A DNA stretch of 64,000 bases from the IMG/VR virus record IMGVR_UViG_3300042544_001590, positions 62,001 to 126,000 of that record; one strand, given 5' to 3'. The position numbers and the translations under genes were made by a program. Below, piece by piece: positions 2 through 39,940 of the stretch. The notes beneath the pieces were generated by a model that was given only the letters and a program-made list of their open reading frames with translations, did not search any database and was not told the DNA's origin. How positions within the stretch are numbered: the stretch's first letter is position 1; each line of letters opens with the position of its first letter.

Positions 2-130
2 CCTTTGGAAAAGGATTGGCAAAGCGGGACTGTTCGGGCATACATCAACGGCAAGGAAATCTTCGCCGCTCTGGAGAAGGGCAAGAACCAGCCTTGGATT
101 GTGCGCCATGTTGATGATCTGTTCGCATAA
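2..130 (+). CDS. partial small hypothetical protein (array cassette; 5' end outside window)
   Basis: Open frame PLEKDWQSG...VDDLFA* ending GCA TAA, with the same codon style as the downstream cassettes. Confidence 0.7.
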   Translation, partial: PLEKDWQSGTVRAYINGKEIFAALEKGKNQPWIVRHVDDLFA

Positions 131-135
131 TGTTC

Positions 136-435
136 CTAATCAGAATGTTCCTTGATATGACATAATCGACAAAGCCAAGTTATATCAAGAGGTTTGGAAT
201 AATCTTTATGATGCATTTCCTCGCCTATCTCACCACATATACAATTTTCGCGCAATATCTTACCACGTTTTAAATATACATTTGCTGTTGATCGTGCATT
301 AGCTTTCAATCGCTGAATATCACTAAGTTCTGAATGTTTGGTTCTATTGATTCGCATCCATTCAGCACGGCATGATTTACACCAACGTTGATTATTAACC
401 CGCTCATTCACTTTACATTTATTACAATATGTCAT
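136..435 (-). CDS. HNH endonuclease, inverted within the cassette array
   Basis: CxxC pairs plus HHKDYSKPLDITWLCRLCH HNH-type motif; AT-rich; TAAGTA-N5-ATG upstream supports a start at 435 rather than 462. Confidence 0.75.
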   Translation of the reverse strand: MTYCNKCKVNERVNNQRWCKSCRAEWMRINRTKHSELSDIQRLKANARSTANVYLKRGKILRENCICGEIGEEMHHKDYSKPLDITWLCRLCHIKEHSD

Positions 436-510
436 AATAATACTTAGAATATTGTTCCACATTTGTATAGTGGAACAAGTGATGTTTAAAAACTAGCCTA
501 GACTGATCAC

Positions 511-648
511 ATGAAGGAACTGCCACCGTGCCACAAAGATTCCCCCCTCCATGATAAATGGCTTGTCATTGTCGCTCAAATGGAGGATGAGGGATGCGAT
601 ACATCCGATGCCCAATCCATAGCCGATATTGAGGTGTTTAAAAACTAG
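511..648 (+). CDS. small hypothetical protein, 45 aa
   Basis: ATG 6 nt after TAGACT of motif copy 487; stop is the TAG of the next motif; below the ORF-track length cutoff. Confidence 0.7.
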   Translation: MKELPPCHKDSPLHDKWLVIVAQMEDEGCDTSDAQSIADIEVFKN

Positions 649-664
649 ATTAAGATTTAGCTAC

Positions 665-830
665 CAATACAACGCCGGAGCCGCTGCGGAGCGGAGTCCC
701 CCGCAAAGGGACATATAAAAAAGCTTTTGTCGTTCGATTCCCGGATGCATACGGGATAGAGCAAGAGGACTAGCTATCCTTGGACAAGACGAAAGCGGAG
801 GGTTCGAAACCTTCCTCGGGCTTCCTTTTC
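665..830 (+). ncRNA. putative structured ncRNA / degenerate tRNA-like cassette
   Basis: Follows a motif copy but has no suitable ATG; T-arm-like GAGGG-TTCGAAA-CCTTC (798-814), anticodon-arm-like GAGGA-CTAGCTA-TCCTT (765-781), GTCCC/GGGAC hairpin. Confidence 0.4.
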
Positions 831-855
831 TTAAAAACTAAACCAGAATAACACC

Positions 856-1026
856 ATGACGAGACAATATACAAACCGACTGCTGGAAATGATCGAAGAT
901 GGTCTGCTTGACAAGGACAACGTGATCATGGCTTGTGTCAAATACATGTCGGAGGACGATGTGGAGGACATGATGAAATGCAACGAATTTCTGGAGGACG
1001 AAGAAGAGGAGGATGAGGACGAATAA
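856..1026 (+). CDS. small acidic hypothetical protein, 56 aa
   Basis: MTRQYTNRLLEMIEDG...EDEEEEDEDE*; motif copy 832 upstream; stop TAA is the start of the next motif. Confidence 0.8.
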   Translation: MTRQYTNRLLEMIEDGLLDKDNVIMACVKYMSEDDVEDMMKCNEFLEDEEEEDEDE

Positions 1027-1050
1027 AAACTAGCGTAAGATAGCCTCACC

Positions 1051-1275
1051 ATGAAACGATACGCCATAAGATCAAAACAAAAGGAAATAGGATATATCAA
1101 ATTTACAGTTCCCACCATTGAAGTATTACATTTCAATTCTCCTTTCTTTCTTGGATCGTGGTGTGCTGACAATGGAACACTGTGGACATGTTTGGATGAT
1201 GGGAAAAACATTTTTGAGAATGAGAATGAAGCCAAGGAAAGATTGGCCGAAATCATCAAGGAATTGTTCGCTTAA
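1051..1275 (+). CDS. small hypothetical protein, 74 aa
   Basis: ORF track; flanked by motif copies. Confidence 0.8.
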   Translation: MKRYAIRSKQKEIGYIKFTVPTIEVLHFNSPFFLGSWCADNGTLWTCLDDGKNIFENENEAKERLAEIIKELFA

Positions 1276-1296
1276 AAACTAGACCAGAATAACACC

Positions 1297-1452
1297 ATGA
1301 TAATCACATACACCGCAAGATACGCAGATGGTGAAAAAGTCACGTTCACGGGAAAATTCGATGACCTGAAAGACTTTGGGAATTTCGCTCACCGTGAGAG
1401 CAAAAGGCCGAATTACAATGGTGATATGTTCATCATCATTAGCATCGTTTAA
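1297..1452 (+). CDS. small hypothetical protein, 51 aa
   Basis: MIITYTARYADG...IISIV*; bounded by motif copies 1273 and 1450. Confidence 0.75.
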   Translation: MIITYTARYADGEKVTFTGKFDDLKDFGNFAHRESKRPNYNGDMFIIISIV

Positions 1453-1476
1453 AAACTAGCCTAAGATTATCGCACC

Positions 1477-1560
1477 ATGAAACAACTCATCCTTGACACC
1501 CTCGCCGCGTTCTTCCTGTTCGCGTTCACTCCCATCGTCCTGTTCATCCTGATCGGATAA
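1477..1560 (+). CDS. single-pass membrane peptide, 27 aa
   Basis: MKQLILDTLAAFFLFAFTPIVLFILIG*; motif copy 1450 upstream. Confidence 0.7.
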   Translation: MKQLILDTLAAFFLFAFTPIVLFILIG

Positions 1561-1593
1561 CCTTTATAAAAACTAGCGTAAGCTCGTAGCACC

Positions 1594-1848
1594 ATGAAAC
1601 TGAAAATAACAAGCACCGCACCAGTCGCAGTCGAAACCTATGTTGAGGGTAATATTGTCCTCGGGCATTTCGAGTACAACGAGGGTGATTCCGCCCTTGG
1701 GGTCAATCCCCACTTTGTCCTTGTCGATGAAGTGTCGGATGACTTCCCAATCCTTTGGGAAGGGCAGGAAGTGACCATTCACAACGGGTGGTTCATCTTC
1801 GATGACGTTCACTTCGGAGAAGTGAAATTCAAGTTCGCCGGATATTAA
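1594..1848 (+). CDS. small hypothetical protein, 84 aa
   Basis: ORF track; motif copy 1567 upstream. Confidence 0.8.
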   Translation: MKLKITSTAPVAVETYVEGNIVLGHFEYNEGDSALGVNPHFVLVDEVSDDFPILWEGQEVTIHNGWFIFDDVHFGEVKFKFAGY

Positions 1849-1925
1849 ACCAACCCCGAAAGGGGTTCAATCCCCCTTATAAAAACTAGCCTAGACTGAT
1901 CTCGTAACCAACACCAACCAACACC

Positions 1926-2165
1926 ATGACCAACAAACAAATCATCGCAAAATTCGTGCAAGGCGCAACCAAGGGCAAGAACAGCCTGAAAAGCATGTTC
2001 ATCGAGGGGGATACCCTTTACTCCTATGGCTATCACTTCCCGCTTGCAAGGCGGCAGGAGGGCGGTTTCTGGGTCAACCCTGACCGTTACAGCGTCACCA
2101 CCTCCAAGCAACAAGGTATGGTTCGCGGAGCCATTGTCAACGCGGGTTTCTCTTTCGTGGCATAA
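1926..2165 (+). CDS. small phage protein with YSYGYHF...YSVTTSKQQ motif
   Basis: ORF track; motif copy 1880 followed by a CA-rich leader (AACCAACACC x2). Confidence 0.8.
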   Translation: MTNKQIIAKFVQGATKGKNSLKSMFIEGDTLYSYGYHFPLARRQEGGFWVNPDRYSVTTSKQQGMVRGAIVNAGFSFVA

Positions 2166-2229
2166 CATGGTGAAAGTCCCCTCTCTCTGGTGGTTCGGAG
2201 AGAGGGGCAAACCATCTTAAAAACTAACT

Positions 2230-2328
2230 ATGAGAGAACTCATTCTTATCCTCGCCGTTGTCGGCTTGCTTGCCTCTGGCTTGTGGCCTTTCGCCCTTGT
2301 CCTGTTTATCCTTTATCTCTGGTTTTGA
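2230..2328 (+). CDS. hydrophobic membrane peptide, 32 aa
   Basis: MRELILILAVVGLLASGLWPFALVLFILYLWF*; variant motif TAAAAACTAA directly upstream. Confidence 0.65.
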   Translation: MRELILILAVVGLLASGLWPFALVLFILYLWF

Positions 2329-2374
2329 CAAGTCGGATTCCTCCTTTTAAAAACTAGCCTAGACTGATTGCACC

Positions 2375-2689
2375 ATGAGCAACTACCCATTGGAAGATAT
2401 CCTCCGCGCCCGTAAAACCACCATCACGGGAGTCCGTGAAAAGAGCTATGGCAAGCTCCATGAAGTCTATGGGGGCGCACCCTGTGACTGGTCAAAGGCA
2501 CAAGGCGCAACCCATACGCTTTACTGTGGGGAAACGTCCGGCTTGTATGGGCGACCCGGAACCGGAACCCGTCCCGCGAAACTCCTAAAAACCGTTCTCT
2601 ACGTGGGGAACGATGTCACCGACGACGACCAAATCATCTGGGACAAGTGGGACATCAAAACCATCTGGGAAAACGCAAATAAAAACTAG
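2375..2689 (+). CDS. hypothetical protein, 104 aa
   Basis: ORF track; stop is the TAG of motif copy 2680. Confidence 0.8.
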   Translation: MSNYPLEDILRARKTTITGVREKSYGKLHEVYGGAPCDWSKAQGATHTLYCGETSGLYGRPGTGTRPAKLLKTVLYVGNDVTDDDQIIWDKWDIKTIWENANKN

Positions 2690-2706
2690 ATTAAGATAGC
2701 TGCACC

Positions 2707-2919
2707 ATGAAAACTCAACAACTTATCCGCCGCCTGAACGTGGTTTTCCGCGATCACAATCTCCCAAAGCAAGAAACGTTTGAAGCTTGTTTTAAGCAAG
2801 CCGAAAGGAATTACTGGCTGAAGGGGAAAGACTTCGTTGCCGCTTGTGAAAGGGCAATGTCCCATGAACAGATTGACAAGGACAACGCGCTTCTCAAAGC
2901 CGCAGGATTCACCGCATAA
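2707..2919 (+). CDS. small hypothetical protein, 70 aa
   Basis: ORF track; bounded by motif copies. Confidence 0.8.
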   Translation: MKTQQLIRRLNVVFRDHNLPKQETFEACFKQAERNYWLKGKDFVAACERAMSHEQIDKDNALLKAAGFTA

Positions 2920-2943
2920 AAACTAGCGCAAAATAGCTGCACC

Positions 2944-3333
2944 ATGAAATACATCGCAAATATAATCCCCACGCTTGAAAAGATCGTTTCTACCCGTGAG
3001 GCGAACAGCGTCCCCTCCCAATTGACAAGGGGAGGGGAAATCAGGATTTACCCCGTCTGGAAAGATGGGGAGAAAGTCAAGGGCAAGCGTTTGCTTTCCT
3101 TCAAGCCCTATGTCCACCCCTCCAAAAGCGCGGAAGAGAATCACCGGAACTTGCAAGCGGAAGAGCAAGCGATCCAATCGGTTTTTCCAAGCTATCGCGC
3201 CCCCTCTCTGGCTCAAATCAAAACCCTTGGAAGCGCAATGAAAGCCATGACAAAGGAAATCTTGCGGGACGGTGCGATTGCCGAAAGGGGATTGCCGAAA
3301 GCAAGTGAAGTGTGGTTCGCTCGCCTTGCATAA
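2944..3333 (+). CDS. hypothetical protein, 129 aa
   Basis: ORF track; bounded by motif copies. Confidence 0.8.
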   Translation: MKYIANIIPTLEKIVSTREANSVPSQLTRGGEIRIYPVWKDGEKVKGKRLLSFKPYVHPSKSAEENHRNLQAEEQAIQSVFPSYRAPSLAQIKTLGSAMKAMTKEILRDGAIAERGLPKASEVWFARLA

Positions 3334-3357
3334 AAACTAGCGTAAGATAGCTGCACC

Positions 3358-3582
3358 ATGAAAACACTGATCGGAACTAAAGTATTACACGGATCGCCCG
3401 GATATCAAACGCCGGAAACCATTGCGGAAATCACCCCGAAAGGGCATGACTTCGAGATGGTTTTCGAGTCGGGATTTTTCTCCACCTTGTCCTTGGATGA
3501 ACTCCATGAACTTCAAGACGATGGGGAAGTCCACTTCAAGGAAACACACGGCGGGTTCACCGTCATCACCCTGACCGCATAA
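3358..3582 (+). CDS. small hypothetical protein, 74 aa
   Basis: ORF track; bounded by motif copies. Confidence 0.8.
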   Translation: MKTLIGTKVLHGSPGYQTPETIAEITPKGHDFEMVFESGFFSTLSLDELHELQDDGEVHFKETHGGFTVITLTA

Positions 3583-3588
3583 AAACTA

Positions 3589-3614
3589 GGGGGGAGCGCA
3601 TCCTACACGCTCAA
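3589..3614 (+). repeat. 26-bp element GGGGGGAGCGCATCCTACACGCTCAA, copy 1
   Basis: Identical to 5078-5103; contains a GAGCG/CGCTC stem. Confidence 0.9.
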
Positions 3615-3650
3615 CGTCCTAGCGTTTAAAAACTAGCCTAAGATACCACC

Positions 3651-3824
3651 ATGACCAAGAAACACTTCGAGATCGTCGCATCCACCATCGCCGCAATGCC
3701 TTCCCATGCTCCAACGCTTCGCACACAGAAGCGTTCATGCGCTCTGGCCTTTGCCGATAGATTCCAAGCGGAATTTCCCCGCTTCAACCGTGAAACTTTC
3801 CTGAAAGCTTGCGGAGAAGCCTGA
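3651..3824 (+). CDS. small phage protein, 57 aa
   Basis: MTKKHFEIVASTIA...FPRFNRETFLKACGEA*; motif copy 3627 upstream. Confidence 0.8.
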   Translation: MTKKHFEIVASTIAAMPSHAPTLRTQKRSCALAFADRFQAEFPRFNRETFLKACGEA

Positions 3825-3856
3825 TCGTATAAAAACTAGCCTAAGATAGCTGCACC

Positions 3857-3997
3857 ATGATAAACAACATGTTATTCACCACCAGCGGCGTAGTCCTTGC
3901 CTATGCCATCACAAGAGATGCTGCCATCGCCATTTCCCAATTTGCTCGTCGTCCCGTTCGCTGGGGTGATGAATTGATTGGAGCAGAATACGCCTGA
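3857..3997 (+). CDS. small hypothetical protein, 46 aa
   Basis: MINNMLFTTSG...IGAEYA*; bounded by motif copies 3830 and 3998. Confidence 0.7.
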   Translation: MINNMLFTTSGVVLAYAITRDAAIAISQFARRPVRWGDELIGAEYA

Positions 3998-4024
3998 TAA
4001 AAACTAGCCTAAGATAGCTGCACC

Positions 4025-4258
4025 ATGAAAACTTACCAATTCAAAGACGGTGAATTCCAATTTTACTACGCGCAATACGGATCGATGGATCGTGACAAGC
4101 GCATCGTATTCCGTGTTCGAGTGGATCGTGACCCCAAGGAAAGGGCAAGAGAGAAGGGCATCACCGGATGGGATCGTATCATTCAAGTCTGGGAAGGACA
4201 AGAGTGGATGATTGATCAGTGGTTTGCCACCCATCAGGGAATGGAAGCCATTGCATAA
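4025..4258 (+). CDS. small hypothetical protein, 77 aa
   Basis: ORF track; bounded by motif copies. Confidence 0.8.
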   Translation: MKTYQFKDGEFQFYYAQYGSMDRDKRIVFRVRVDRDPKERAREKGITGWDRIIQVWEGQEWMIDQWFATHQGMEAIA

Positions 4259-4282
4259 AAACTAGCGTAAGATTACTGCACC

Positions 4283-4576
4283 ATGAAACCGAAAACACAG
4301 AAAGAGATCGCACTGAAAGACGGCAGCACGCTTCCCAAGGGTCTGCCCGTCTCCTTCATCGATGGCAAGGACAGCCGTTGCCTTGTTCACTCGCCAAACC
4401 ATAGCGAGCCGTTACAAGTGCGTATTACAAGCGCATTTAAAGCCCCTTCCATGTCATCCTTGGAACGCTGGTCTTATGATAGCGTGTGTAAGACTCCCAC
4501 GGGCAAGCGGGTAGAGCCGGATGGACATGGCCCGGATGGTAGCCCAAGCTGGTTGCTGGTCTATGGTCTGATCTGA
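4283..4576 (+). CDS. small phage protein with CKTPTG..VEPDG..PDGSPSWL..GLI motif
   Basis: ORF track; bounded by motif copies. Confidence 0.8.
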   Translation: MKPKTQKEIALKDGSTLPKGLPVSFIDGKDSRCLVHSPNHSEPLQVRITSAFKAPSMSSLERWSYDSVCKTPTGKRVEPDGHGPDGSPSWLLVYGLI

Positions 4577-4595
4577 TAAAAACTAGGTTAAAGTA

Positions 4596-4679
4596 TTGCT
4601 ACCATGAAACCTACCTACGAAGAGAAAGAAGCCTCCGTTGCTACCATGAAACCTACCTACGAAGAGAAAGAAGCCGCCG
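4596..4679 (+). repeat. 42-bp tandem duplication including the start codon
   Basis: TTGCTACCATGAAACCTACCTACGAAGAGAAAGAAGCC(T/G)CCG x2, one mismatch. Confidence 0.95.
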
Positions 4680-4795
4680 TTCGTTATGAAAACGATTGGT
4701 CTTGGAAATGCCCATGTCCTCCTGAAGATATCCAAGATGATCACAACTTTATCGCTTGGATCGACAATCACGGGGAGTGGATTTATCTCGGATAA
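4604..4795 (+). CDS. small hypothetical protein with duplicated N-terminus
   Basis: MKPTYEEKEA occurs twice; bounded by motif copies. Confidence 0.75.
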   Translation: MKPTYEEKEASVATMKPTYEEKEAAVRYENDWSWKCPCPPEDIQDDHNFIAWIDNHGEWIYLG

Positions 4796-4819
4796 AAACT
4801 AGCGTAAGATTACTGCACC

Positions 4820-5071
4820 ATGAAAAACAAAATCACCAAGCTGAATCGCCTGTTCCCGAACATCAAAGCCGTCTCCACCGTCGAGTGGGATGGGGAGGAA
4901 GGTGGCATCTGGTTCCGTCAGGAAGGTCGTTGCCATACGGATGGAATGCCATACTTCGATTACTACAACGACGAGCAGCAAGTCCATCCCGAGGTCGAGA
5001 AAGCCCTGAAAGGTATGGGCTTGTATGCGGAGCCATACGATGCCGGAACGTGGATGGCATTTGAAGCATGA
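4820..5071 (+). CDS. small hypothetical protein, 83 aa
   Basis: ORF track; motif copy 4793 upstream. Confidence 0.8.
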   Translation: MKNKITKLNRLFPNIKAVSTVEWDGEEGGIWFRQEGRCHTDGMPYFDYYNDEQQVHPEVEKALKGMGLYAEPYDAGTWMAFEA

Positions 5072-5077
5072 TCAAAA

Positions 5078-5103
5078 GGGGGGAGCGCATCCTACACGCT
5101 CAA
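5078..5103 (+). repeat. 26-bp element, copy 2
   Basis: Identical to 3589-3614. Confidence 0.9.
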
Positions 5104-5135
5104 GCTTTTAAAAACTAGGTTAAGATAGCTGCACC

Positions 5136-5405
5136 ATGATACCATCCACTTACTACTCCCCGCGCCATAACGAAACCTTCACCGTGATTGTGGAGGAAGT
5201 CCAGCCCCATTGGGCGTGTGCAAGGTTCGCCAAGGTGCGGGTTCAGATTGGGCATTACAACTTCACAGGGGAACACTTCGTTGCCCGTGGACATGGCGAT
5301 GCAATGACGTTAGAAGCCGCCTATGAGATGGCGGTGAATGATGTTGAGCGTGTCGATGTCGAAGGTGTCGAGGAAGATTACTTGATGCTTCACGGATGCG
5401 ATTGA
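5136..5405 (+). CDS. small hypothetical protein, 89 aa (last cassette)
   Basis: ORF track; motif copy 5109 upstream. Confidence 0.8.
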   Translation: MIPSTYYSPRHNETFTVIVEEVQPHWACARFAKVRVQIGHYNFTGEHFVARGHGDAMTLEAAYEMAVNDVERVDVEGVEEDYLMLHGCD

Positions 5406-5700
5406 TATATCTAACAGCCCCGCTGGTCTTCGGATCGGCGGGGCTTTTTTTGTGTCGTGATATATACCTGTTAGATATGGCATAGTGTTTGGCATATATG
5501 GGAAAGGCTTCTGTTAGATATGCCATATCTAACTGTTAGGGGGGGGGGCTGCTCAGAATAGCTTAAAAACTAGGGTGGGGGTGGGATGGGGGGTGGTGCC
5601 ATGGCTAAAATATTTTTTATATATTTTTCCCGTTTTTCCCATATGCGCCCATTTGAAAAAAATTTTTTTTATAAAAATACTTAATTTTTCCCATATGGAT
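5405..5700. repeat. noncoding block of direct/inverted repeats, a palindrome and G-runs
   Basis: CTGTTAGATAT at 5468 and 5511, inverted at 5407-5417; palindrome GTTAGATATG-C-CATATCTAAC 5513-5533; TTTCCCATAT twice (about 5636 and 5687) and inverted at 5496-5505; G-tracts 5539-5548 and 5573-5593. Confidence 0.75.
5416..5451 (+). terminator. intrinsic terminator closing the array
   Basis: 13-bp stem AGCCCCGCTGGTC/GATCGGCGGGGCT (two G-U pairs), cUUCGg loop, T-run. Confidence 0.92.
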
Positions 5701-7006: not shown

Positions 7007-7276
7007 TTATTGATTGCCGGAATCTGTTGGAATATCATTCCATTGTTTGATACATAATTGAGTTGGATATTCTTCCATGGGATAATCCACAATGTTGATT
7101 TGGTGGTCGAATTCACACATCCTACATTCCACCCATATGCATTGGTAATCGATCCCCTTCATGGATGTTGTCATACCCCCCGAATCAACTTCTATGTTAT
7201 CGCTTCCGCATTTGGGGCATGGTTTAGGTTCTTTTTTCGTTTCCATCAATCTATTTTCCACTCCTCCTCTTTCCAT
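7007..7276 (-). CDS. Lar-like zinc-ribbon protein
   Basis: PKPCPKCGS...IWVECRMC pattern. Confidence 0.5.
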   Translation of the reverse strand: MERGGVENRLMETKKEPKPCPKCGSDNIEVDSGGMTTSMKGIDYQCIWVECRMCEFDHQINIVDYPMEEYPTQLCIKQWNDIPTDSGNQ

Positions 7277-7937: not shown

Positions 7938-8127
7938 AGATCATTTCATTTAGGACTGAAGGACAGTGGGTGTTTTCAGGATATTCGTTGGAATTGAAAT
8001 AAAATATCTCCTCATTTTCCATTAATGTTGCTCTATATAATCTTTGAAATTCGCTCAAAGCTGGGGTGGTATCATCAACGTAATCCAGCACCCTTTTCCA
8101 TTTCTTGATTAATTCTTCGTTTGTCAT
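7891..8127 (-). CDS. small hypothetical protein
   Basis: ORF track; 4-nt overlap with the HAD gene. Confidence 0.65.
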   Translation of the reverse strand: MTNEELIKKWKRVLDYVDDTTPALSEFQRLYRATLMENEEIFYFNSNEYPENTHCPSVLNEMICEIRRSGKILNSPYE

Positions 8128-8648
8128 ACCATTTTCTCCTTTAGGAATTCCTTCACATCCTCCTCAAACCAATCCCCATCCTTTCCGTTTGCCCCGTAGT
8201 AATCCCTTACCTTGAGATAGCGATCCTCGTTAATTCCGATCAGGTTCACCTTACCCATGTTCTGCCTGTAGGGGAGATTATCAATGAGAACGTTGTCCTT
8301 GTGGGCAACCCCTTCCTTTTCCACATAGGCACTCCCCCCATAAGCGGTGGGGATCAGGTGTCTTTGGATTTCCTCCCTTGCAATGATATGATCCCTCTCA
8401 AATCCCCACCCCGCTTTCTCGTTGATGGTGTTGGCGTAATCGGTGGTGGATGTTGTTAAGATATATACGTTATCCTTTCCCACAAGTTCCCTTGCATAAT
8501 CAATCAGTCCTTGGGCGCAGGGTCTAATGATCGTGTAATAGGTGTTGAGATCATCCTCCAGAGTGAATTGGATATGTTCTTGGTTGGGATCACGTAGGAG
8601 GGTGTGAATAAGGCATTCATCGATGTCCCAGAAGATTTTGTTTATCAT
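8124..8648 (-). CDS. HAD-superfamily (FCP1/NIF-like) phosphatase
   Basis: WDIDECLIHT motif I, IIRP, YILTT motif II, LIDN motif IV. Confidence 0.8.
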   Translation of the reverse strand: MINKIFWDIDECLIHTLLRDPNQEHIQFTLEDDLNTYYTIIRPCAQGLIDYARELVGKDNVYILTTSTTDYANTINEKAGWGFERDHIIAREEIQRHLIPTAYGGSAYVEKEGVAHKDNVLIDNLPYRQNMGKVNLIGINEDRYLKVRDYYGANGKDGDWFEEDVKEFLKEKMV

Positions 8649-9819: not shown

Positions 9820-9847
9820 TTGACATCCTTAAAAACTAGGCTATCAT
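9820..9847 (+). promoter_or_regulatory. promoter combining TTGACA, TAAAAACTAG and TATCAT
   Basis: TTGACA-TCCT-TAAAAACTAG-GC-TATCAT places the array motif inside a sigma70 spacer. Confidence 0.8.
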
Positions 9848-9856
9848 GAATCCATC

Positions 9857-10225
9857 ATGGGATTGGCAATTGGATTATCAAAAAGCAGTGACAGCAACTC
9901 AATGCCCCAAACGGCATCAAGTTTAACGATCAATAATTTTCTAAAGATTCCAAAGGAAAAGATTTATGCCCCCAATCCAAACCCTTTCAAGTTCAAGGTT
10001 CTGAGAGAGGAAAAGTTGGAAAGGGGGATGATCCTTCTGGTGAATTACGAGGGATGCACCACTTTCAAGGGAGATAAATTATTATTATTGCGTTGCCACA
10101 TTGATGTGAAATACTTTGGAAAGCTTGATCCCCACATTCTGGGAGACGGTCATATCGTATGTGCGCGATTTGAGCCGACTACGGAAGGATGGAACATGGC
10201 AAGGATGGCTGCAAATTGTTTATAA
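9857..10225 (+). CDS. hypothetical protein
   Basis: ORF track; promoter directly upstream. Confidence 0.75.
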   Translation: MGLAIGLSKSSDSNSMPQTASSLTINNFLKIPKEKIYAPNPNPFKFKVLREEKLERGMILLVNYEGCTTFKGDKLLLLRCHIDVKYFGKLDPHILGDGHIVCARFEPTTEGWNMARMAANCL

Positions 10226-10694: not shown

Positions 10695-10766
10695 CGCCGA
10701 ATATATCAGGGGTAGATAAGCTGGCTCATAACCAGAAGGTCGGGGATTCGAATTCCTCTTCGGCAA
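10695..10766 (+). tRNA. tRNA-Met(CAT), initiator-like
   Basis: Cloverleaf with loop CTCATAA and C1:A72 mismatch; no encoded CCA. Confidence 0.85.
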
Positions 10767-11374: not shown

Positions 11375-11595
11375 AATTCTCCAAGATTAAAAGATTCTGG
11401 ATCACCAATTTCGGAATGCCTGATATATCCTTCGGTATCCACATCTGCATGGACAAAAGGATTGACATCCACTTTCTCTGGTATATGATCAGCTTTGGCA
11501 GAGTTCCCATCTACGAAGAGAAGGGAAAGCTGTTCGCCGCCAGTAATTCCTATCACACCGGAAGATCGAAACGACTGAGAGCGGGAGTGCCTTAA
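11371..11595 (+). CDS. small hypothetical protein
   Basis: ORF track; 4-nt overlap; stop codon is the TAA of a motif copy. Confidence 0.7.
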   Translation: MKFSKIKRFWITNFGMPDISFGIHICMDKRIDIHFLWYMISFGRVPIYEEKGKLFAASNSYHTGRSKRLRAGVP

Positions 11596-11610
11596 AAACT
11601 AGAATACAAT
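11593..11610 (+). promoter_or_regulatory. TAAAAACTAG-AA-TACAAT promoter, 6 nt before ATG
   Basis: Same architecture as the array motif. Confidence 0.8.
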
Positions 11611-11616
11611 ACGAAT

Positions 11617-12075
11617 ATGAATCAAGAATTAATAACACACGACTCGGAGACACTGAAACATGTCAACGAGGTAAGAAACAACATATGGACTCTGATCAAA
11701 GAGTTGGATCATAGGGCGCAAGTTCATGATGCTTCCAAATTTGAAGAACCGGAGAGAAGTATCTTTGCCAGCAACACTTCCAAATTGGCGAAGACCCAAT
11801 ATGGGACGGATGAATATTCCAAGCTGTTGGAGGAAGTGAAACCAGCAATTGAACATCATTACTCAAAAAACACTCACCATCCCGAACATTGGCCGAACGG
11901 CATTGAGGACATGGATTTACTTGATCTTGTTGAAATGTTAGCAGATTGGGCGGCTGCAACAAAAAGAAATAAGAATGGTAACATCCATAAGTCAATCGAA
12001 CATAATCAGGAGAGATTTAAAATAACACCACAATTATCAAAAATTTTCACAAACACTGTAAATAGATATTTTTAA
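11617..12075 (+). CDS. HD-superfamily-like protein (DUF5662-like)
   Basis: VHDASKF...HHYSKNTHHPEHW...EMLADW pattern. Confidence 0.7.
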   Translation: MNQELITHDSETLKHVNEVRNNIWTLIKELDHRAQVHDASKFEEPERSIFASNTSKLAKTQYGTDEYSKLLEEVKPAIEHHYSKNTHHPEHWPNGIEDMDLLDLVEMLADWAAATKRNKNGNIHKSIEHNQERFKITPQLSKIFTNTVNRYF

Positions 12076-12880: not shown

Positions 12881-12968
12881 GGGTTTGTAGGTAAGTGGTT
12901 GAAACCAACGGACTTTTAATCCGTCTCCGAAAGGAACATCTCAGGTTCGAATCCTGATGAACCCACCA
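12881..12968 (+). tRNA. tRNA-Lys(TTT) with long variable arm
   Basis: Loop CTTTTAA, stem ACGGA/TCCGT, extra arm TCC-GAAA-GGA, T-loop TTCGAAT, CCA. Confidence 0.88.
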
Positions 12969-12969
12969 T

Positions 12970-13042
12970 ACACATGAACGCACCACGGCTGGGCGGGTGG
13001 ATTGTTACTCCATTGAACTTCGTTCGATCCGAAGCATGTGTG
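12970..13042 (+). tRNA. tRNA-Asn(GTT), atypical
   Basis: Acceptor ACACATG/CATGTGT, loop TTGTTAC, G73; A at position 8; no CCA. Confidence 0.75.
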
Positions 13043-13046
13043 CATT

Positions 13047-13121
13047 GATCCCATGGTGAAGTGGTTATCACCCCATACTTTCTATATGGTGTCCCCGATT
13101 CGAATTCGGGTGGGATCACCA
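13047..13121 (+). tRNA. tRNA-Glu(TTC)
   Basis: Acceptor GATCCCA/TGGGATC, loop CTTTCTA (U37), CCA. Confidence 0.88.
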
Positions 13122-13123
13122 AT

Positions 13124-13207
13124 TCTACAGTTCCTTAGTGGTCGAAAGGACTTGCCTTGTAAGCAAGATGCGTAAGCACATCGCCAGTTCGAATCTGGCC
13201 TGTAGAT
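13124..13207 (+). tRNA. tRNA-Thr(TGT) with long variable arm
   Basis: Acceptor TCTACAG/CTGTAGA, loop CTTGTAA, extra arm TGC-GTAA-GCA; no CCA. Confidence 0.85.
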
Positions 13208-13218
13208 CATTTTTTAAT

Positions 13219-13305
13219 GTGTTGTCTCTAATGATGGTGAATTAGGACGGTCTGTAAAATCGTTGCCTTCGGGCTTAGGGGATTCGAATTCCTCACAACA
13301 CACCA
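13219..13305 (+). tRNA. tRNA-Tyr(GTA)
   Basis: Loop CTGTAAA, long variable arm GCC-TTCG-GGC, CCA. Confidence 0.88.
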
Positions 13306-13307
13306 TA

Positions 13308-13383
13308 CAGGGATTGATGTAACTTGGTAGCATGAGACATTTGGATTGTCTTTGTTCGGATTCAACTTCCGAGTCCCTGACCA
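13308..13383 (+). tRNA. tRNA-Pro(TGG)
   Basis: C1-G72, A73, loop TTTGGAT (A37), CCA. Confidence 0.85.
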
Positions 13384-13392
13384 TTTTATAAT

Positions 13393-13472
13393 AGCTGCGT
13401 AGTGTAATGGTTCAGCACTGACGGTTTTGATCCGTCCAGAGTATCAGGGTTCAATTCCCACCGCAGCCACCA
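13393..13472 (+). tRNA. tRNA-Gln(TTG), irregular T-arm
   Basis: Loop TTTTGAT, stem GACGG/CCGTC, CCA; T-stem pairs fully only with an ATCA bulge. Confidence 0.75.
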
Positions 13473-26886: not shown

Positions 26887-28572
26887 ATGAAATCAACGAA
26901 AAAATTAACATTGGAGGTCTTTATCCAAAGATCAAACGAAGCGCATAATAATTTTTATGACTATTCTAAATCAGAATATAAAAACGCAAATACTAAATTA
27001 ACCATAACTTGCCCAACCCATGGAGAATTCATACAGAAACCAGCGGATCACATGCGAGGATGTGGGTGTGTGTTATGTGGGAATTATAAAAACACGAGAT
27101 TGAAACCTTTTGAGCAATTCCTAGAAGAAGCTAATAAAAAACATGATAATTTTTATGATTATAGTAAAAGCATTTATATAAATTCCACCACTAAGATTAA
27201 CATAATTTGTCCTATTCATGGGGATTTCACACAAATTCCAAATTCTCATATTTCGGGTCAGGGATGTCCTAAATGTGGTCATTATAAAAATACAAATAAA
27301 AAGAACACCGAAGACTTTATTAAACGCTCTACGATTATACACAACAATAAATACGATTATTCAAAAGTTGAATATGATGGTAATAAGAAAAAGGTTATTA
27401 TAATATGCCCAACCCATGGAGAATTCATCCAAATTCCAAATGCACATTTACGGGGGGCTGGATGTTGGAACTGTAGTGTTGATTATAGAATGAACGAAAA
27501 AAGATCAAACAGTAAAGATTTTATAGAAAAAGCCAACATAGCCCATCAAAACAAATATGATTATTCATTAGTTAATTATTATAATAATTATCAAAAAATT
27601 CCCATAAAATGTCCTAAGCATGGGATATTCAATCAAAATCCGGGAAACCATTTACAAGGTGCTGGGTGTCCAAAATGCTCTTCAATTGAAAGTAAGTCTG
27701 AAACAAAAATAAAATCTATATTAGAGGAAACGGGAATCGATTTTATACAACAAGATAGAACTTTAATCAACCCATTTGAGATAGATTTCGTAATTCCTGA
27801 TTATAAAATTGGAATTGAGTTTAACGGTATTTACTATCATTCGGAAGATAATGGAGGTAAAAATAAAAAATACCATCTGAATAAAACAGATCGGTGTGAA
27901 AAAGAGGGATATCAATTAATCCATATTTTCGAAAATGAATACATACAAAAATATAATTTGTTGAGATTTAAAATAAAATCACTATTAAATAAAAATAAAT
28001 ATCGCATATTTGCTAGGAAGTGTATTGTCCGAGAAATAACACCTCAAGAGAAATGCAGATTTAATAAAAAATATCACATACAAGGGGATTCCCAATCATG
28101 TGTTAATTTGGGGTTGTTTTATAAAGAGAGGTTGGTTCAAGTTATGACTTTTTCTAAAAGAAGAAAAGCATTAGGTTCTAAACACGTTAAAGGTGAATAT
28201 GAACTTTCCAGAATGTCTTCTATGAAAGGATTTACCATTGTGGGTGGCGCATCCAAGCTATTAAAACATTTTGAGAAACATTATAATCCTAAGAAGTTAA
28301 TCTCTTATGCTGATAGAAGGTGGAGTAAAGGAGATGTGTATTATAAAATGGGGTTTTCATTTATTAGAAACACCCCACCAAATTATTGGTATTTTTATAA
28401 AAAACGCGCTGATAAGCCATTACACCACCGATACAAATTCGCTAAACATACTCTTGAAAAACAATTGGAAATATTTGACCCAAATTTAACAGAGTGGGAA
28501 AACATGAAAAACAATCATTATGATCGTATCTGGGACTCTGGTAATATGCTATTTGAAAAGGTGTATGATTAA
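26887..28572 (+). CDS. Hef-like free-standing homing endonuclease
   Basis: Four YDYSK...ICP.HG.F.Q.P..H..G.GC repeats, EIDFVIP...GIEFNG.YYH nuclease motif, C-terminal GGASKL..ISYADRRWS; antisense to the structural genes. Confidence 0.82.
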   Translation: MKSTKKLTLEVFIQRSNEAHNNFYDYSKSEYKNANTKLTITCPTHGEFIQKPADHMRGCGCVLCGNYKNTRLKPFEQFLEEANKKHDNFYDYSKSIYINSTTKINIICPIHGDFTQIPNSHISGQGCPKCGHYKNTNKKNTEDFIKRSTIIHNNKYDYSKVEYDGNKKKVIIICPTHGEFIQIPNAHLRGAGCWNCSVDYRMNEKRSNSKDFIEKANIAHQNKYDYSLVNYYNNYQKIPIKCPKHGIFNQNPGNHLQGAGCPKCSSIESKSETKIKSILEETGIDFIQQDRTLINPFEIDFVIPDYKIGIEFNGIYYHSEDNGGKNKKYHLNKTDRCEKEGYQLIHIFENEYIQKYNLLRFKIKSLLNKNKYRIFARKCIVREITPQEKCRFNKKYHIQGDSQSCVNLGLFYKERLVQVMTFSKRRKALGSKHVKGEYELSRMSSMKGFTIVGGASKLLKHFEKHYNPKKLISYADRRWSKGDVYYKMGFSFIRNTPPNYWYFYKKRADKPLHHRYKFAKHTLEKQLEIFDPNLTEWENMKNNHYDRIWDSGNMLFEKVYD

Positions 28573-28737: not shown

Positions 28738-29052
28738 ATGGAATCCAATAACGGCTCAACTTTTTATAATCCAAACACTTCTCGAAATTTCGTAACAACC
28801 ATTAATACTGGATTGTCCGGATTTCAGTCTTTTACTTGCTCTGAAGTATTGGTAATTAATAGAACTGGACAGGATGTTTATCTATATGATAGTGGTGACA
28901 CTGGGGATACAAACAGACTTCTAATTTTAGATGATGAGTCAATCGTAATCAGGGGAGTTAGCAATAGTTCCTCTTTAAGTGCTAAAACCGCTACTGGCAG
29001 TGGTGATTTATATTATCGCGCATCCAAATTCAGCAATTACAATCAAGGATAA
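28738..29052 (+). CDS. putative virion structural protein
   Basis: TAAATA-N5-ATG supports a start at 28738 (MESNNG); S/T/N-rich. Confidence 0.7.
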   Translation: MESNNGSTFYNPNTSRNFVTTINTGLSGFQSFTCSEVLVINRTGQDVYLYDSGDTGDTNRLLILDDESIVIRGVSNSSSLSAKTATGSGDLYYRASKFSNYNQG

Positions 29053-29888
29053 TGGCAGGGATACCGTCAATAGCAAATATTAATAGATTTATTGAATCTG
29101 GGCTTGGACGTTCTTTAGACCCAGACGCTAAAGGATACATTAATTCAGTTGTCGCTGCTGGTGGGACGGTTAGTGGGACGCAGAGGGCAGCAATCAACAC
29201 ATTCTACAAGACAGGAAAAGCCGATGGCTGGTATTCCTCTCTGAAACGCGTGTATCTGCCAATCTGGGGAGTTGCTGCACCCAACGCCATCGACATGATT
29301 GCGAGGGGAAGCGGCACGTTCACGGGCACTGTGACGCACGGAGCGGGATATGTTCAAAGCAACGGGACGACCGGGTATTTCCGCACAGGAACCGCGTTTT
29401 CAACAGAAGGGCTAAGCGCGGCTGATGGATACATCTTCGGGCTTCACTACACCGCGAACACCACGAATCCAGCGGTGTGCATCGGGTCGGGAAACACGAA
29501 CACCTGCTACTACTTCATGACGACCACAACCGCCACGGCGCGTTGGTGCAACTCTGCATCCGGCTCAAGCATCGCCACCACGCGGACAGGAATCTTTTCA
29601 TTCTCCCGCAAGTCAGGCGTGCGGACATTTTGGAGACGCGCAACAAGCGGCAGGACGGTGCTTGTAACATCTACCGACGCAGACGCCGGAACCATTTCCG
29701 CAAGCCCTGTTTTAGCAATGGCGAACAATGGAACCGACGTCGCCGCGACCTTTAACCCGCAGTTTTACGACGACGGGCAAAAGGGTGCTTATGGCTTTGG
29801 CCTTGGCCTAACAAACGCTCAGGACTTATCTTTCACGGCATCACTTAAAACACTTTGGGAAACCTGCACCGGACTTACACTACCATGA
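29052..29888 (+). CDS. putative fibre / receptor-binding protein
   Basis: G/T/A-rich beta-type sequence; GC-rich relative to flanks. Confidence 0.6.
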   Translation: MAGIPSIANINRFIESGLGRSLDPDAKGYINSVVAAGGTVSGTQRAAINTFYKTGKADGWYSSLKRVYLPIWGVAAPNAIDMIARGSGTFTGTVTHGAGYVQSNGTTGYFRTGTAFSTEGLSAADGYIFGLHYTANTTNPAVCIGSGNTNTCYYFMTTTTATARWCNSASGSSIATTRTGIFSFSRKSGVRTFWRRATSGRTVLVTSTDADAGTISASPVLAMANNGTDVAATFNPQFYDDGQKGAYGFGLGLTNAQDLSFTASLKTLWETCTGLTLP

Positions 29889-33272: not shown

Positions 33273-33617
33273 TTAAATCAATTCAGGATTTTCAAAAATA
33301 TTCCCAATAATCTCTCTATCACATACATCAAGCAACCAACAACCCAATCCACCATTAGATTCAAGAACAAACCTCGATTCGGTATTTTCCCACACAACTT
33401 CAAATAGATCATCGATATCCGTAGAACCAAATGATATAATATCACCCTCATAAATCTCAACTTCATTTTTATCGAGAAGACCTGTCCACTGCTGGATGAC
33501 AAATTCTTCGCTTGGATGTGGTGTGTAAATCTGTCCTGATACGAAATCTCCGTCCATGAAAGCTTTGAACTCCTTATCAACTTTATCCCAAACACGAAAT
33601 TTAAATTTTCGATTCAT
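33273..33617 (-). CDS. YopX-family protein
   Basis: KFRVWD, QWTGLLDKNEVEIYEGDI, IIGNIFENPEL. Confidence 0.88.
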   Translation of the reverse strand: MNRKFKFRVWDKVDKEFKAFMDGDFVSGQIYTPHPSEEFVIQQWTGLLDKNEVEIYEGDIISFGSTDIDDLFEVVWENTESRFVLESNGGLGCWLLDVCDREIIGNIFENPELI

Positions 33618-33623
33618 GAGATG

Positions 33624-33651
33624 AGTGTATTCTAGTTTTTAAGAAAATCAA
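33624..33651 (-). promoter_or_regulatory. TTGATT-N4-TAAAAACTAG-AA-TACACT promoter, 6 nt before ATG
   Basis: Reverse-strand copy of the array motif at 33632-33641. Confidence 0.78.
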
Positions 33652-39664: not shown

Positions 39665-39940
39665 TTATTCATCTTTTTTGGAAGGCAAGCGTTTTTTAGA
39701 AATATAATTAATTCTCTTCCGTTTCAGCTTGGGTATCACATTCTCAAAAAATTGAAATCGCTCCTCATCCGTCTCAAAAATTGAACTATATTTATTTACA
39801 GTCTCGTTGGCATAGTTCAACAGATCATTATCATAGAAACTCAAATAGCGAGTCACCATGTAAGGGGAGAACTCTTCCAATAGTTCGTTGGTCATTTCTC
39901 CTTTTTTATCAAAGAGCATGTGGTTGATTGAATTAAACAT
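39665..39940 (-). CDS. gp62: clamp loader small subunit gp62-like
   Basis: FSPYMVTRYLSF...YANETVN...F.NVIPK.KRK. Confidence 0.68.
   Translation of the reverse strand: MFNSINHMLFDKKGEMTNELLEEFSPYMVTRYLSFYDNDLLNYANETVNKYSSIFETDEERFQFFENVIPKLKRKRINYISKKRLPSKKDE

What the first reader, a model, noticed from the sequence alone, without database searches (positions are those of the whole stretch)
487..5451. Array of about 20 micro-gene cassettes, each with its own promoter-like repeat that often doubles as the upstream stop codon
Seen: 22 copies of TAAAAACTA(G/A), mostly followed by NN-TANNNT and then ATG 6 or 9 nt later, separate unrelated 27-129 aa ORFs, all on the + strand. The repeat's TAA, or its TAG in another frame, ends many upstream ORFs, leaving almost no spacer. 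Spot counts suggest about 50-55% GC, against about 35-40% in most of the window. Stem-loops sit just before several repeats, and one strong terminator closes the block. Known: SPO1 has a host-takeover module of separately promoted small genes, and PeSL (promoter-early stem-loop) elements in RB49-type T4 phages drive modular shuffling by recombination between promoter repeats. Inference: this is an integron-like cassette system without an integrase in the window, in which a ~27-bp stop/promoter/start repeat is both the expression signal and the crossover point for gaining, losing and reordering early effector genes.
Basis: partly seen in the sequence, partly recalled or inferred. Interest (0 to 1): 0.9.

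Follow-up and report, generated by a model that had tools for sequence, protein, structure and literature searches.

The report
Promoter-repeat gene cassette array, T4-type phage
An uncultured lake phage related to T4 carries dozens of tiny genes, each behind the same compact stop/promoter/start repeat, and relatives have gained, lost and reordered these genes exactly at that repeat; this is a new, extreme form of a gene-shuffling process already known in T4-type phages.

Summary
TAAAAACTAR occurs 25 times in the window (0.42 expected), 22 of them on the + strand in 487-5573. The block is only the 3' end of a longer array: the same viral contig has 37 more copies directly upstream of the window, and a relative has 71 copies in 27.7 kb.

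Each unit is W-TAAAAACTA-R, 2 nt, a -10-like hexamer with invariant A and T, then ATG 6 nt later (about 80% of copies) or 9 nt later. There is no -35 and no Shine-Dalgarno. This predicts single-gene, leaderless transcripts. The 10-mer supplies stop codons in two frames, and 59% of modules stop all three.

The small ORFs are real genes (median dN/dS 0.16) but almost all are ORFans.

Across about 20 related viral contigs, cassette content and order differ. Homology blocks start at the first base of the repeat (53% of block starts against 2.3% by chance). Two contigs 97-98% identical differ by three events, all bounded by the repeat.

This is a promoter-mediated modular shuffling region of the PeSL kind, in a new compact form without -35, stem-loop or ribosome-binding site. 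Promoter activity, expression timing, host and the recombination enzyme are inferred, not shown. The integron comparison is only an analogy.

The parts
5..130 (+). 3' end of the preceding cassette ORF (64 aa, family 20). Its promoter repeat lies 88 nt upstream of the window.
136..462 (-). Reverse-strand 108-aa endonuclease-like gene inserted between cassettes. A relative has a small forward cassette at this junction. An inverted repeat lies at about 455-481.
   Evidence: phrog_2340 endonuclease 3e-13; junction comparison
487..648 (+). Cassette: repeat 487-496, -10-like TAGACT, ATG at 511, 45-aa ORF ending in the TAG of the next repeat
   Evidence: dN/dS 0.15
639..831 (+). Cassette with repeat and TAAGAT but no ORF. 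Possible small RNA; weak tRNA-like fold at 739-822.
   Evidence: z -2.8; ARAGORN only at relaxed threshold; no Rfam hit; no homologue in relatives
832..1026 (+). Cassette: 56-aa very acidic ORF (856-1026), stop = TAA of next repeat
1024..1275 (+). Cassette: 74-aa ORF (1051-1275), low GC (0.37), not found in the related contigs
1273..1452 (+). Cassette: 51-aa ORF (1297-1452)
1450..1560 (+). Cassette: 27-aa hydrophobic ORF (1477-1560)
1567..1867 (+). Cassette: 84-aa ORF (1594-1848) followed by hairpin 1852-1867
1880..2215 (+). Cassette: 79-aa ORF (1926-2165) of a widespread small phage protein family, ATG 46 nt from the repeat start; long hairpin at about 2167-2215
   Evidence: phrog_7247 3e-13; Atlas DUF8033-like clusters 0.91; hairpin -29 kcal/mol
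2218..2328 (+). Repeat without a -10, then a 32-aa hydrophobic ORF (2230-2328)
2348..2689 (+). Cassette: 104-aa ORF (2375-2689) ending in the TAG of the next repeat
   Evidence: (dN/dS 0.13)
2680..2919 (+). Cassette: 70-aa ORF (2707-2919)
2917..3333 (+). Cassette: 129-aa ORF (2944-3333). Confident predicted fold with no solved-structure relative; only 7 related clusters among 1.84 billion representatives.
   Evidence: pLDDT 85; best E 0.07
3331..3582 (+). Cassette: 74-aa ORF (3358-3582)
3580..3626 (+). 'Empty' unit: repeat, then hairpin 3594-3612, then the next repeat. The same hairpin element recurs at 5083-5101.
3627..3824 (+). Cassette: 57-aa ORF (3651-3824)
3830..3997 (+). Cassette: 46-aa ORF (3857-3997), TGA abuts the next repeat
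3998..4258 (+). Cassette: 77-aa ORF (4025-4258)
4256..4576 (+). Cassette: 97-aa ORF (4283-4576)
4577..4795 (+). Cassette: 63-aa ORF (4604-4795). A 42-nt in-frame tandem duplication (4596-4681) spans the end of the repeat and the first codons.
4793..5101 (+). Cassette: 83-aa ORF (4820-5071) followed by hairpin 5083-5101
5109..5405 (+). Last cassette: 89-aa ORF (5136-5405)
5416..5445 (+). Strong intrinsic terminator (13-bp stem, T run) closing the array
5450..5700 (+). Conserved non-coding region after the terminator. It holds direct and inverted GTTAGATATG repeats, G runs, and a stand-alone copy of the 10-mer (5564-5573) without -10 or ORF, conserved in three relatives.
9830..9859 (+). Repeat copy outside the array, with TATCAT and ATG at offset 27, ahead of a 122-aa ORF. 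TTGACA lies upstream.
11593..11619 (+). Repeat copy outside the array, with TACAAT and ATG at offset 24, ahead of a DUF5662 gene (11617-12075)
33615..33641 (-). Only minus-strand copy, with TACACT and ATG at offset 24, ahead of the minus-strand ORF 33273-33617

Best explanation
The finding is the last third of a very long plastic region in an uncultured freshwater T4-type myovirus. Nearly every gene in it is a separate cassette headed by one compact module: W-TAAAAACTA-R, two free bases, a -10 hexamer (nAnnAT), then ATG 6 nt later, or 9 nt later with an ACC leader.

Inferred mechanism of expression. A bacterial-type RNA polymerase uses the hexamer as the -10. It uses the invariant 10-mer, at about -24 to -15, in place of a -35 element. 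It starts 7 nt downstream of the hexamer, that is at or 3 nt before the A of ATG, so each gene is made as a leaderless mRNA. The module also ends the upstream gene, because the 10-mer carries stop codons in two frames and the variable part often supplies the third. Almost no spacer is therefore needed, and a cassette can be placed after any other.

Shown by comparison. The module is where related genomes differ: cassettes have been inserted, deleted, replaced and moved, with junctions at the repeat.

Inferred mechanism of exchange. The phage's general recombination or replication machinery acts on the 10-30 bp of identity between modules, through unequal crossover, excision and re-insertion, or template switching, as proposed for PeSLs.

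The cassette genes are real, fast-turning-over small proteins of mostly unknown role. They are probably host-takeover or anti-defence functions.
For: Phage context: gp23 capsid, gp20 portal and gp15 Pfam hits, and tRNAs. The best cultured relatives share only about 33% capsid identity.

Enrichment: 25 copies against 0.42 expected. All are co-oriented with the next gene.

Size: the array continues upstream, with 59 contiguous copies in this contig plus 11 in two other pieces of it. A relative has 71 copies in 27.7 kb.

Logo from 503 copies: A at position 13 in 100% and T at position 17 in 99-100%, which correspond to -11 and -7. There is no conservation where a -35 would lie. C/T then A occur at positions 23/24 in both spacing classes.

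Ascertained independently of the 10-mer: 482 copies have 0 mismatches and 52 have 1 mismatch (mostly one A6 variant). Almost none have 2-3 mismatches, and the rest is background.

A second, T4-late-like motif, TAAATA-N5-ATG, precedes the portal gene and other genes of the window (22 against 4.35 expected). No Shine-Dalgarno appears anywhere in the window. Start-at-ATG therefore looks like a genome-wide habit.

Coding: median dN/dS is 0.16 in 39 cassettes, and all are below 0.5.

Flux: 626 cassettes fall into 242 families, 141 of them singletons, and orders differ between contigs.

Junctions: identity is at the random level up to base -1 and 100% from base 0. 53% of homology-block starts fall within -6..+3 of a repeat start, against 2.3% for the null. 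In a 97-98% identical pair, all three differences are bounded by repeats, and two are clean repeat-to-repeat indels with 20-24 nt of overlap.

Stops: 309 of 549 ORFs end inside or against the next repeat. 59% of modules stop all three frames, against 24% when the variable part is shuffled.

Breadth: a contig with GC 0.33 shares the module but only 3 of its 55 cassette families with this genome.
Against: There are no transcript data, so promoter use, start site and timing are inferred.

Only one strong terminator closes the block, so much read-through is likely.

The purine at -3 and the ACC before ATG could instead reflect a translation context.

One copy in the upstream part abuts tRNA-Arg so closely that a start 7 nt after its hexamer would fall inside the tRNA. 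Three window copies lack a -10 or an ORF.

Repeats coincide with gene boundaries, so selection for intact genes alone would also place surviving breakpoints there.

The shared identity is often only 10-12 bp, which is short for classical homologous recombination.

About 19 contigs from many samples are 100% identical over this region.

The host and the polymerase factor that reads the 10-mer are unknown.
Confidence: 0.72

Rival explanations
1. The 10-mer is the site of a dedicated phage-encoded or injected protein. This could be a sigma-like or MotA-like specificity factor, which would make these middle rather than early genes. It could also be a site-specific recombination protein. The array would then be a factor-dependent regulon or a true site-specific cassette system, not a set of host-read promoters shuffled by general recombination.
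For: The 10-mer is far more uniform than ordinary promoter elements: 482 exact, and almost none with 2-3 mismatches. It sits where no standard sigma-70 element lies, and there is no -35. Lineage-specific variants are fixed within a contig: the A6 form in L001/L012, and TAAAGACTAA in all 7 copies of L165. A stand-alone copy without -10 or gene is conserved after the terminator. The window also has a few ordinary TTGACA-N16-hexamer promoters that could serve the true early genes.
Against: No candidate factor or recombinase was found in the ORFs scanned. Only about 80 of the 207 kb were readable. Linkage of the variable promoter positions suggests that crossovers spread over the repeat rather than falling at one fixed point. 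Uniformity could also come from gene conversion between copies.
Confidence: 0.25
2. The repeat is only an expression signal. Cassette gain and loss happen by illegitimate or other recombination, and the junctions lie at repeats merely because rearrangements that cut genes are lost.
For: Repeats and gene boundaries coincide, so the enrichment cannot separate the two ideas. The genotype is stable across many samples.
Against: Junctions are seamless, with random-level identity right up to base -1 and no leftover or duplicated spacer. Two recent indels in a 97-98% identical pair have their ends inside overlapping repeat copies, which is the signature of repeat-to-repeat exchange. A repeat copy sits as a bare junction against a tRNA, where it cannot serve as its promoter.
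Confidence: 0.12
3. The repeat acts at the RNA level on a long polycistronic transcript. It would be a ribosome landing or re-initiation site, or a processing site that frees each ORF, in a system without Shine-Dalgarno pairing. It would not be a promoter.
For: There is one strong terminator for about 20 genes. The distance to ATG is fixed, with a purine at -3 and an ACC context. The genome lacks Shine-Dalgarno sequences. The stop of one ORF lies 21-24 nt before the next ATG.
Against: The invariant A and T spaced as in a -10, with degenerate positions between, fit DNA recognition by sigma rather than an RNA signal. Copies also precede an ORF-less unit and lie beside tRNAs. The portal gene and other genes of the window carry a different motif at the equivalent position, and it matches the T4 late promoter core.
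Confidence: 0.08

Closest known systems
PeSL (promoter-early stem-loop) cassettes of T4-type phages RB49/phi1, T4/PST and KVP40/nt-1 (PMC2839356, PMC4122927)
   Same: T4-type phage. Repeated promoter modules stand in front of small ORFan genes in a plastic region. Insertions, deletions and replacements between relatives are bounded by the modules. Exchange is proposed to occur by recombination between short repeats.
   Different: There is no -35 and no N17 spacer; an invariant 10-mer abuts the -10 instead. There is no Shine-Dalgarno, and ATG lies at the predicted start site. The stem-loop terminator is mostly absent, and the upstream stop codon lies inside the module. Density is much higher: nearly every gene, about 60-70 in a row. 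Mini-circles have not been examined.
T4 early and MotA-dependent middle promoter sets in T4 early regions
   Same: Many separately promoted small non-essential genes lie on one strand of a T4-type genome. In T4 middle promoters a specific box replaces the -35. (From general knowledge and PMC4122927.)
   Different: The MotA box (TGCTT) is centred near -30, 11-13 bp from the -10. Here the box is a different sequence and lies 2 bp from the -10. T4 messages have leaders and ribosome-binding sites.
Integron gene cassette arrays
   Same: A one-strand array of single-gene cassettes separated by a short repeated site. Content and order vary between relatives.
   Different: No integrase was seen. The repeat is not an imperfect palindrome like attC. 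Every cassette has its own promoter instead of sharing Pc. Exchange is probably driven by homology.
SPO1 host-takeover module; leaderless gene expression in Thermus phage phiYS40 (both recalled from memory, not checked here)
   Same: A cluster of small, individually promoted early genes (SPO1). Phage transcripts that begin at the start codon from -10-only promoters (phiYS40).
   Different: These are unrelated phages with different promoter sequences. Neither has been described as having cassette exchange at the promoter.

Membership tests
PeSL-type shuffling region | Lies in a T4-type phage genome | tested here: met
   Pfam Gp23 (1e-82), Portal_T4 (1.5e-87), T4-gp15
PeSL-type shuffling region | Repeated module contains a sigma-70-like promoter with -35, about 17-bp spacer and -10 | tested here: not met
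   The -10 is present with invariant A and T. There is no conservation at the -35 position; a 10-mer lies at about -24..-15 instead.
PeSL-type shuffling region | Stem-loop terminator just upstream of the promoter | tested here: not met
   309 of 549 ORFs stop inside or against the next repeat. Only about 49 have a 13-80 nt tail, and about half of those fold well. There are four hairpins among 22 window units.
PeSL-type shuffling region | Shine-Dalgarno and start codon at the 3' end of the module | tested here: not met
   ATG lies at a fixed offset of 24 or 27, but there is no purine-rich ribosome-binding site.
PeSL-type shuffling region | Modules flank ORFans and bound the indels and replacements between related genomes | tested here: met
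PeSL-type shuffling region | Recombination between neighbouring modules yields mini-circles | not testable with these tools
   Needs reads or inverse PCR
Integron | Tyrosine-recombinase integrase next to the array | tested here: inconclusive
   None was found among the roughly 60 ORFs scanned in Pfam/PHROGs. Most of the 207-kb genome was not readable.
Integron | attC-type imperfect inverted-repeat recombination sites; promoterless cassettes served by one Pc | tested here: not met
   The repeat is asymmetric, and each unit carries its own -10.
Bacterial sigma-70-family promoter | -10 hexamer with conserved A(-11) and T(-7) | tested here: met
   A 100%, T 99-100% in 503 copies
Bacterial sigma-70-family promoter | Transcription starts about 7 nt downstream of the hexamer | not testable with these tools
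   Needs 5'-end mapping. The predicted position is the A of ATG in about 80% of copies.
T4 MotA-dependent middle promoter | MotA box TGCTT centred near -30 | tested here: not met
   Different sequence and position

The most novel reading that the evidence does not exclude
The invariant 10-mer is read by a dedicated, lineage-specific protein that co-evolves with it. That protein both switches on about 70 leaderless single-gene units and marks them as exchange points. This would be a self-contained cassette system, in a phage that appears to express its whole genome, late genes included, without ribosome-binding sites.
Probability: 0.2. Interest if true: 0.85.

Novelty: new variant of a known kind. 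Interest (0 to 1): 0.62.

Why it matters
It extends promoter-mediated modular shuffling, so far described in a few cultured T4-type phages, to an abundant uncultured lake lineage. Here it takes a much more extreme and economical form, in which one roughly 27-bp module serves as stop, promoter, start and exchange site.

The fixed module gives a simple handle for finding the accessory (probably host-takeover or anti-defence) gene pool of this lineage in metagenomes. About 20 contigs already yield 242 families.

The apparent absence of ribosome-binding sites, with both the early-type and the late-type motif placed so that transcripts begin at ATG, points to a host or a phage strategy built on leaderless translation. 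That can be tested once the host is known.

Tried and rejected
- DNA search of the block against 50,697 phage records found no match.
- Rfam on the window start and on the upstream piece found only tRNAs.
- Pfam and PHROGs on all 19 window cassettes and the 10 largest upstream ones gave nothing, except one family of unknown function and one Lar-like hit.
- Protein Atlas on three cassettes gave no usable lead.
- The 129-aa cassette protein gave a confident model but no structural relative.
- Host identification failed. A scan of 185,579 species genomes with the module gave 75 single hits at about the chance level and no arrays. A homologue search with a GC-rich 278-aa ORF returned only unnamed phage-like proteins. 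A WhiB-type cysteine motif search found nothing.
- Exact-protein look-ups meant to find strain-level cassette variants returned only 100% identical copies.
- A scan for the sister motif found one viral contig with a single copy.
- A literature search for the 10-mer found nothing relevant.
- Archaeal TATA-box reading: I dropped it. The invariant A/T hexamer, the T4-late-like motif, the type II (long variable arm) tRNA-Tyr and the HD-domain CCA-adding enzyme all point to a bacterial host.
- Bacteroidota-type promoters: I dropped these too. The TTGACA-type promoters in the window do not fit that group's consensus (recalled, not tested).

Full report
**Observation.** TAAAAACTAR occurs 25 times in the 64-kb window, against 0.42 expected from dinucleotide-preserving shuffles. 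Twenty-two copies lie on the + strand between 487 and 5573. The other three (9830 +, 11593 +, 33641 -) each sit just upstream of a gene on their own strand. Nineteen of the 22 are followed after two bases by nAnnnT. ATG follows 9 nt after the hexamer in 13 units and 6 nt after it in 4. The 19 ORFs behind them are 27-129 aa, all on the + strand, and none falls in the same family as another. Ten of them end in the TAA or TAG of the next repeat. GC is 0.49-0.51 over 2-5 kb, against mostly 0.30-0.45 elsewhere in the window. One strong terminator lies at 5416-5445, and a few hairpins precede repeats. The description is accurate. Only the GC contrast was somewhat overstated, and the stated limits are too narrow.

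**Where it sits.** The window encodes T4-type capsid (gp23), portal (gp20) and gp15 proteins, ribonucleotide reductase, a CCA-adding enzyme and eight tRNAs. The closest cultured phages are cyanophages at about 33% capsid identity, and the block has no DNA match among deposited phages. An exact-pattern scan of viral contigs showed that the window is part of IMGVR_UViG_3300042544_001590 (207,489 bp), starting at contig base 10,756. The 10.7 kb before the window hold 37 more copies of the repeat, giving 59 contiguous units up to the terminator. Two other pieces of the same contig hold 11 more. One of these carries cassette families that precede the array start in relatives, so the array probably runs across the contig ends. 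A relative has 71 copies in 27.7 kb. Five tRNA genes lie inside the upstream part. A reverse-strand endonuclease-like gene (136-462) interrupts the array in the window.

**The module.** I collected 626 repeat copies from 38 sequence pieces belonging to about 20 viral contigs. With position 0 at the T of the 10-mer, the 503 copies with ATG at offset 24 or 27 give the following pattern:
- Position -1 is T or A.
- Positions 0-8 are fixed by the search.
- Position 9 is G or A.
- Position 13 is A in 100% and position 17 is T in 99-100%. Positions 12, 15 and 16 are weaker.
- Nothing is conserved further upstream, so there is no -35.

This is the signature of a -10 element (A at -11, T at -7). In 401 copies ATG starts at position 24, exactly 7 nt after the hexamer, where transcription normally begins. 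In 102 copies it starts at 27, and positions 23/24 are still C/T then A, followed by CC. The simplest reading is a start at position 24 in both classes, giving mRNAs that begin with AUG or ACCAUG. I note that the purine at -3 and the ACC could instead be a translation context.

To avoid circularity I also searched from the hexamer/ATG side. Of such contexts, 482 have the exact 9-mer core and 52 have one mismatch, mostly a single variant with six A's found in two relatives. Only 6 have two or three mismatches, and the rest is background. The 10-mer is therefore nearly all-or-none, much tighter than the -10.

**The rest of the genome behaves alike.** No gene in the window has a Shine-Dalgarno sequence. 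TAAATA followed by 4-6 nt (mostly 5) and ATG occurs 22 times against 4.35 expected, in front of the portal gene and other genes of the window. TAAATA is the core of the T4 late promoter TATAAATA, and the spacing again puts the predicted start at or next to the A of ATG. A few TTGACA-N16-hexamer-N6-ATG promoters also exist. Leaderless expression thus seems to be a genome-wide habit. This supports the reading of the array module as a promoter rather than an RNA signal.

**Stop function.** The 10-mer itself carries TAA in one frame and TAG/TAA in a second. In 59% of modules the variable part supplies a stop in the third frame, against 24% when that part is shuffled. In all, 309 of 549 cassette ORFs end inside or directly against the next repeat.

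**The ORFs are genes.** For 39 cassettes of this genome compared with their closest non-identical homologues, median dN/dS is 0.16 and all values are below 0.5. Third-position GC is 0.49-0.58 in cassettes against 0.39 in core genes. Function is unknown for nearly all of them:
- One upstream cassette is Lar-like (restriction alleviation; Pfam 28.0 bits against a cut-off of 28.6; PHROG 2.6e-8).
- One window cassette belongs to a widespread small phage family.
- Two are short hydrophobic peptides and one is very acidic.
- The 129-aa protein has only 7 related clusters among 1.84 billion representatives. It folds confidently (pLDDT 85) and has no solved-structure relative.

**Comparison with relatives.** The 556 cassette proteins fall into 242 families, 141 of them singletons. 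Written as family strings, the arrays share a collinear backbone broken by many insertions, deletions and replacements, and by some moves. Examples are 0-9-15 here against 0-15-9 in a relative, a swap of 34 and 20, and displacement of families 33, 38 and 39.

Anchored on the repeat, pairs with the same downstream but different upstream cassette have 26-32% identity up to base -1 and 100% from base 0. Pairs with the same upstream but different downstream cassette fall to background after about +30. Among 1,943 inter-contig homology blocks, 53% of internal starts lie within -6..+3 of a repeat start (2.3% by chance) and 43% of ends lie within -3..+36 (9.3% by chance). These blocks are not independent events.

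Two contigs that are 97-98% identical over about 3.8 kb of shared array differ by three events. Two are indels whose flanking alignments overlap by 20-24 nt inside the repeat. The third is a replacement of one cassette by six, bounded by repeats. The variable promoter positions are partly linked to the downstream ORF and hardly at all to the upstream one, so most exchanges fall in or near the 10-mer.

A contig with GC 0.33 has 61 copies of the same module but shares only 3 of its 55 cassette families with this genome. No such arrays occur in 185,579 species genomes.

**Limits.**
- Repeats and gene boundaries coincide, so selection for intact genes could by itself concentrate surviving breakpoints there. 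The seamless junctions and the overlapping-repeat indels argue for a direct role of the repeat, but they do not prove it.
- About 19 contigs from many samples of what seems to be one lake series are 100% identical over this region, so turnover is slow on that scale.
- One upstream copy abuts tRNA-Arg so closely that it cannot be that tRNA's promoter. It looks like a bare junction.
- Three window copies lack a -10 or an ORF. One of them (5564) is conserved in relatives within a non-coding region after the terminator. That would fit a protein that binds the 10-mer alone.
- Distant homologues of the 129-aa cassette sit in other phage fragments behind different uniform modules. One is TAAAGACTAA-AG-TAAACT-N6-ATG in all seven units of a 1.3-kb contig. 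This suggests that the motif and its reader co-evolve by lineage.
- Host, timing and the factor that reads the 10-mer remain unknown.

**Comparison with what is known.** The closest described system is the PeSL of RB49/phi1, T4/PST and KVP40/nt-1. These are composite stem-loop plus sigma-70 promoter plus ribosome-binding-site modules that flank ORFans. They bound indels between relatives and recombine to give mini-circles (PMC2839356, PMC4122927). The present array works like a PeSL region and shares its genomic and evolutionary features. It fails three of the sequence features that define a PeSL: -35 with N17 spacer, stem-loop, and Shine-Dalgarno. It is also much denser. It is not an integron in any defining respect. 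I file it as a new variant of a known kind.

**Verdict.** It is not supported in the integron label, the 'early effector' label or the stated extent. Interest is moderate to high for phage biologists because of the module's economy, the array's size and the apparent genome-wide leaderless design. The principle itself, however, was already known.

Noticed in passing
window 739-822 (inside the ORF-less unit 639-831): Weak tRNA-like fold with a good T-arm and a long variable region. ARAGORN reports it only at a relaxed threshold, as 'Ala agc', 84 nt. There is no Rfam hit and no homologue in the related contigs.
   Followed up: partly
window 12881-13472: Several phage tRNAs are unusually long (Lys 88 nt, Thr 85, Tyr 87, Gln 80). 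The tRNA-Lys model has a long variable arm, which is not usual for that tRNA.
   Followed up: partly
L010 6351-6623, 7724-7902 and 8398-8569 (same contig, upstream of the window): tRNA genes lie inside the cassette array. Twice a conserved 22-aa mini-ORF (family 5) follows the promoter module and precedes tRNA-Leu. tRNA-Arg begins directly after a repeat plus TAGAAT.
   Followed up: partly
window 5450-5700: Conserved non-coding region after the terminator. It has two direct copies of CTGTTAGATATG, a perfect palindrome GTTAGATATG-C-CATATCTAAC, runs of 8-10 G, a stand-alone 10-mer, a G-rich tract and a GCCATGGC palindrome. It could be a regulatory or replication site.
   Followed up: partly
whole window: No Shine-Dalgarno appears before any gene. 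TAAATA-N5-ATG (the T4 late promoter core) precedes the portal gene and other genes of the window. A few CGCTTGACATCC-N16-hexamer-N6-ATG promoters exist (for example before 39933-40700 on the minus strand).
   Followed up: partly
window 4596-4681: A 42-nt in-frame tandem duplication (97% identical) covers the last bases of the promoter module and the first 11 codons of the 63-aa ORF.
   Followed up: no
window 26887-28572 and 41757-43208: Two large paralogous homing-endonuclease-like ORFs (PHROG 559 HNH endonuclease; Pfam DUF723, and a Mom-family domain that is clear in 26887-28572 but below threshold in 41757-43208), in low-GC stretches; 41757-43208 lies about 0.8 kb from the capsid gene.
   Followed up: no
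window 29052-29888: A GC-rich (0.53) 278-aa ORF stands out from its surroundings. It has hundreds of unnamed homologues in metagenomes and no Pfam family.
   Followed up: partly
L165 (Logan SRR24908204, 1.3 kb) and L164 (ENA, 2.35 kb): Distant homologues of the 129-aa cassette lie in other small-gene arrays with different uniform upstream modules. L165 has T(A/G)AAGACTAA-AG-TAAACT-N6-ATG in 7 units. L164 has a CCAATAGAACAC-type module.
   Followed up: partly
window 7007-7276 (-) and 8124-8648 (-): Precomputed Pfam marks on identical contigs show a second weak Lar-like restriction-alleviation ORF and an NIF-type phosphatase, on the opposite strand just beyond the array.
   Followed up: no
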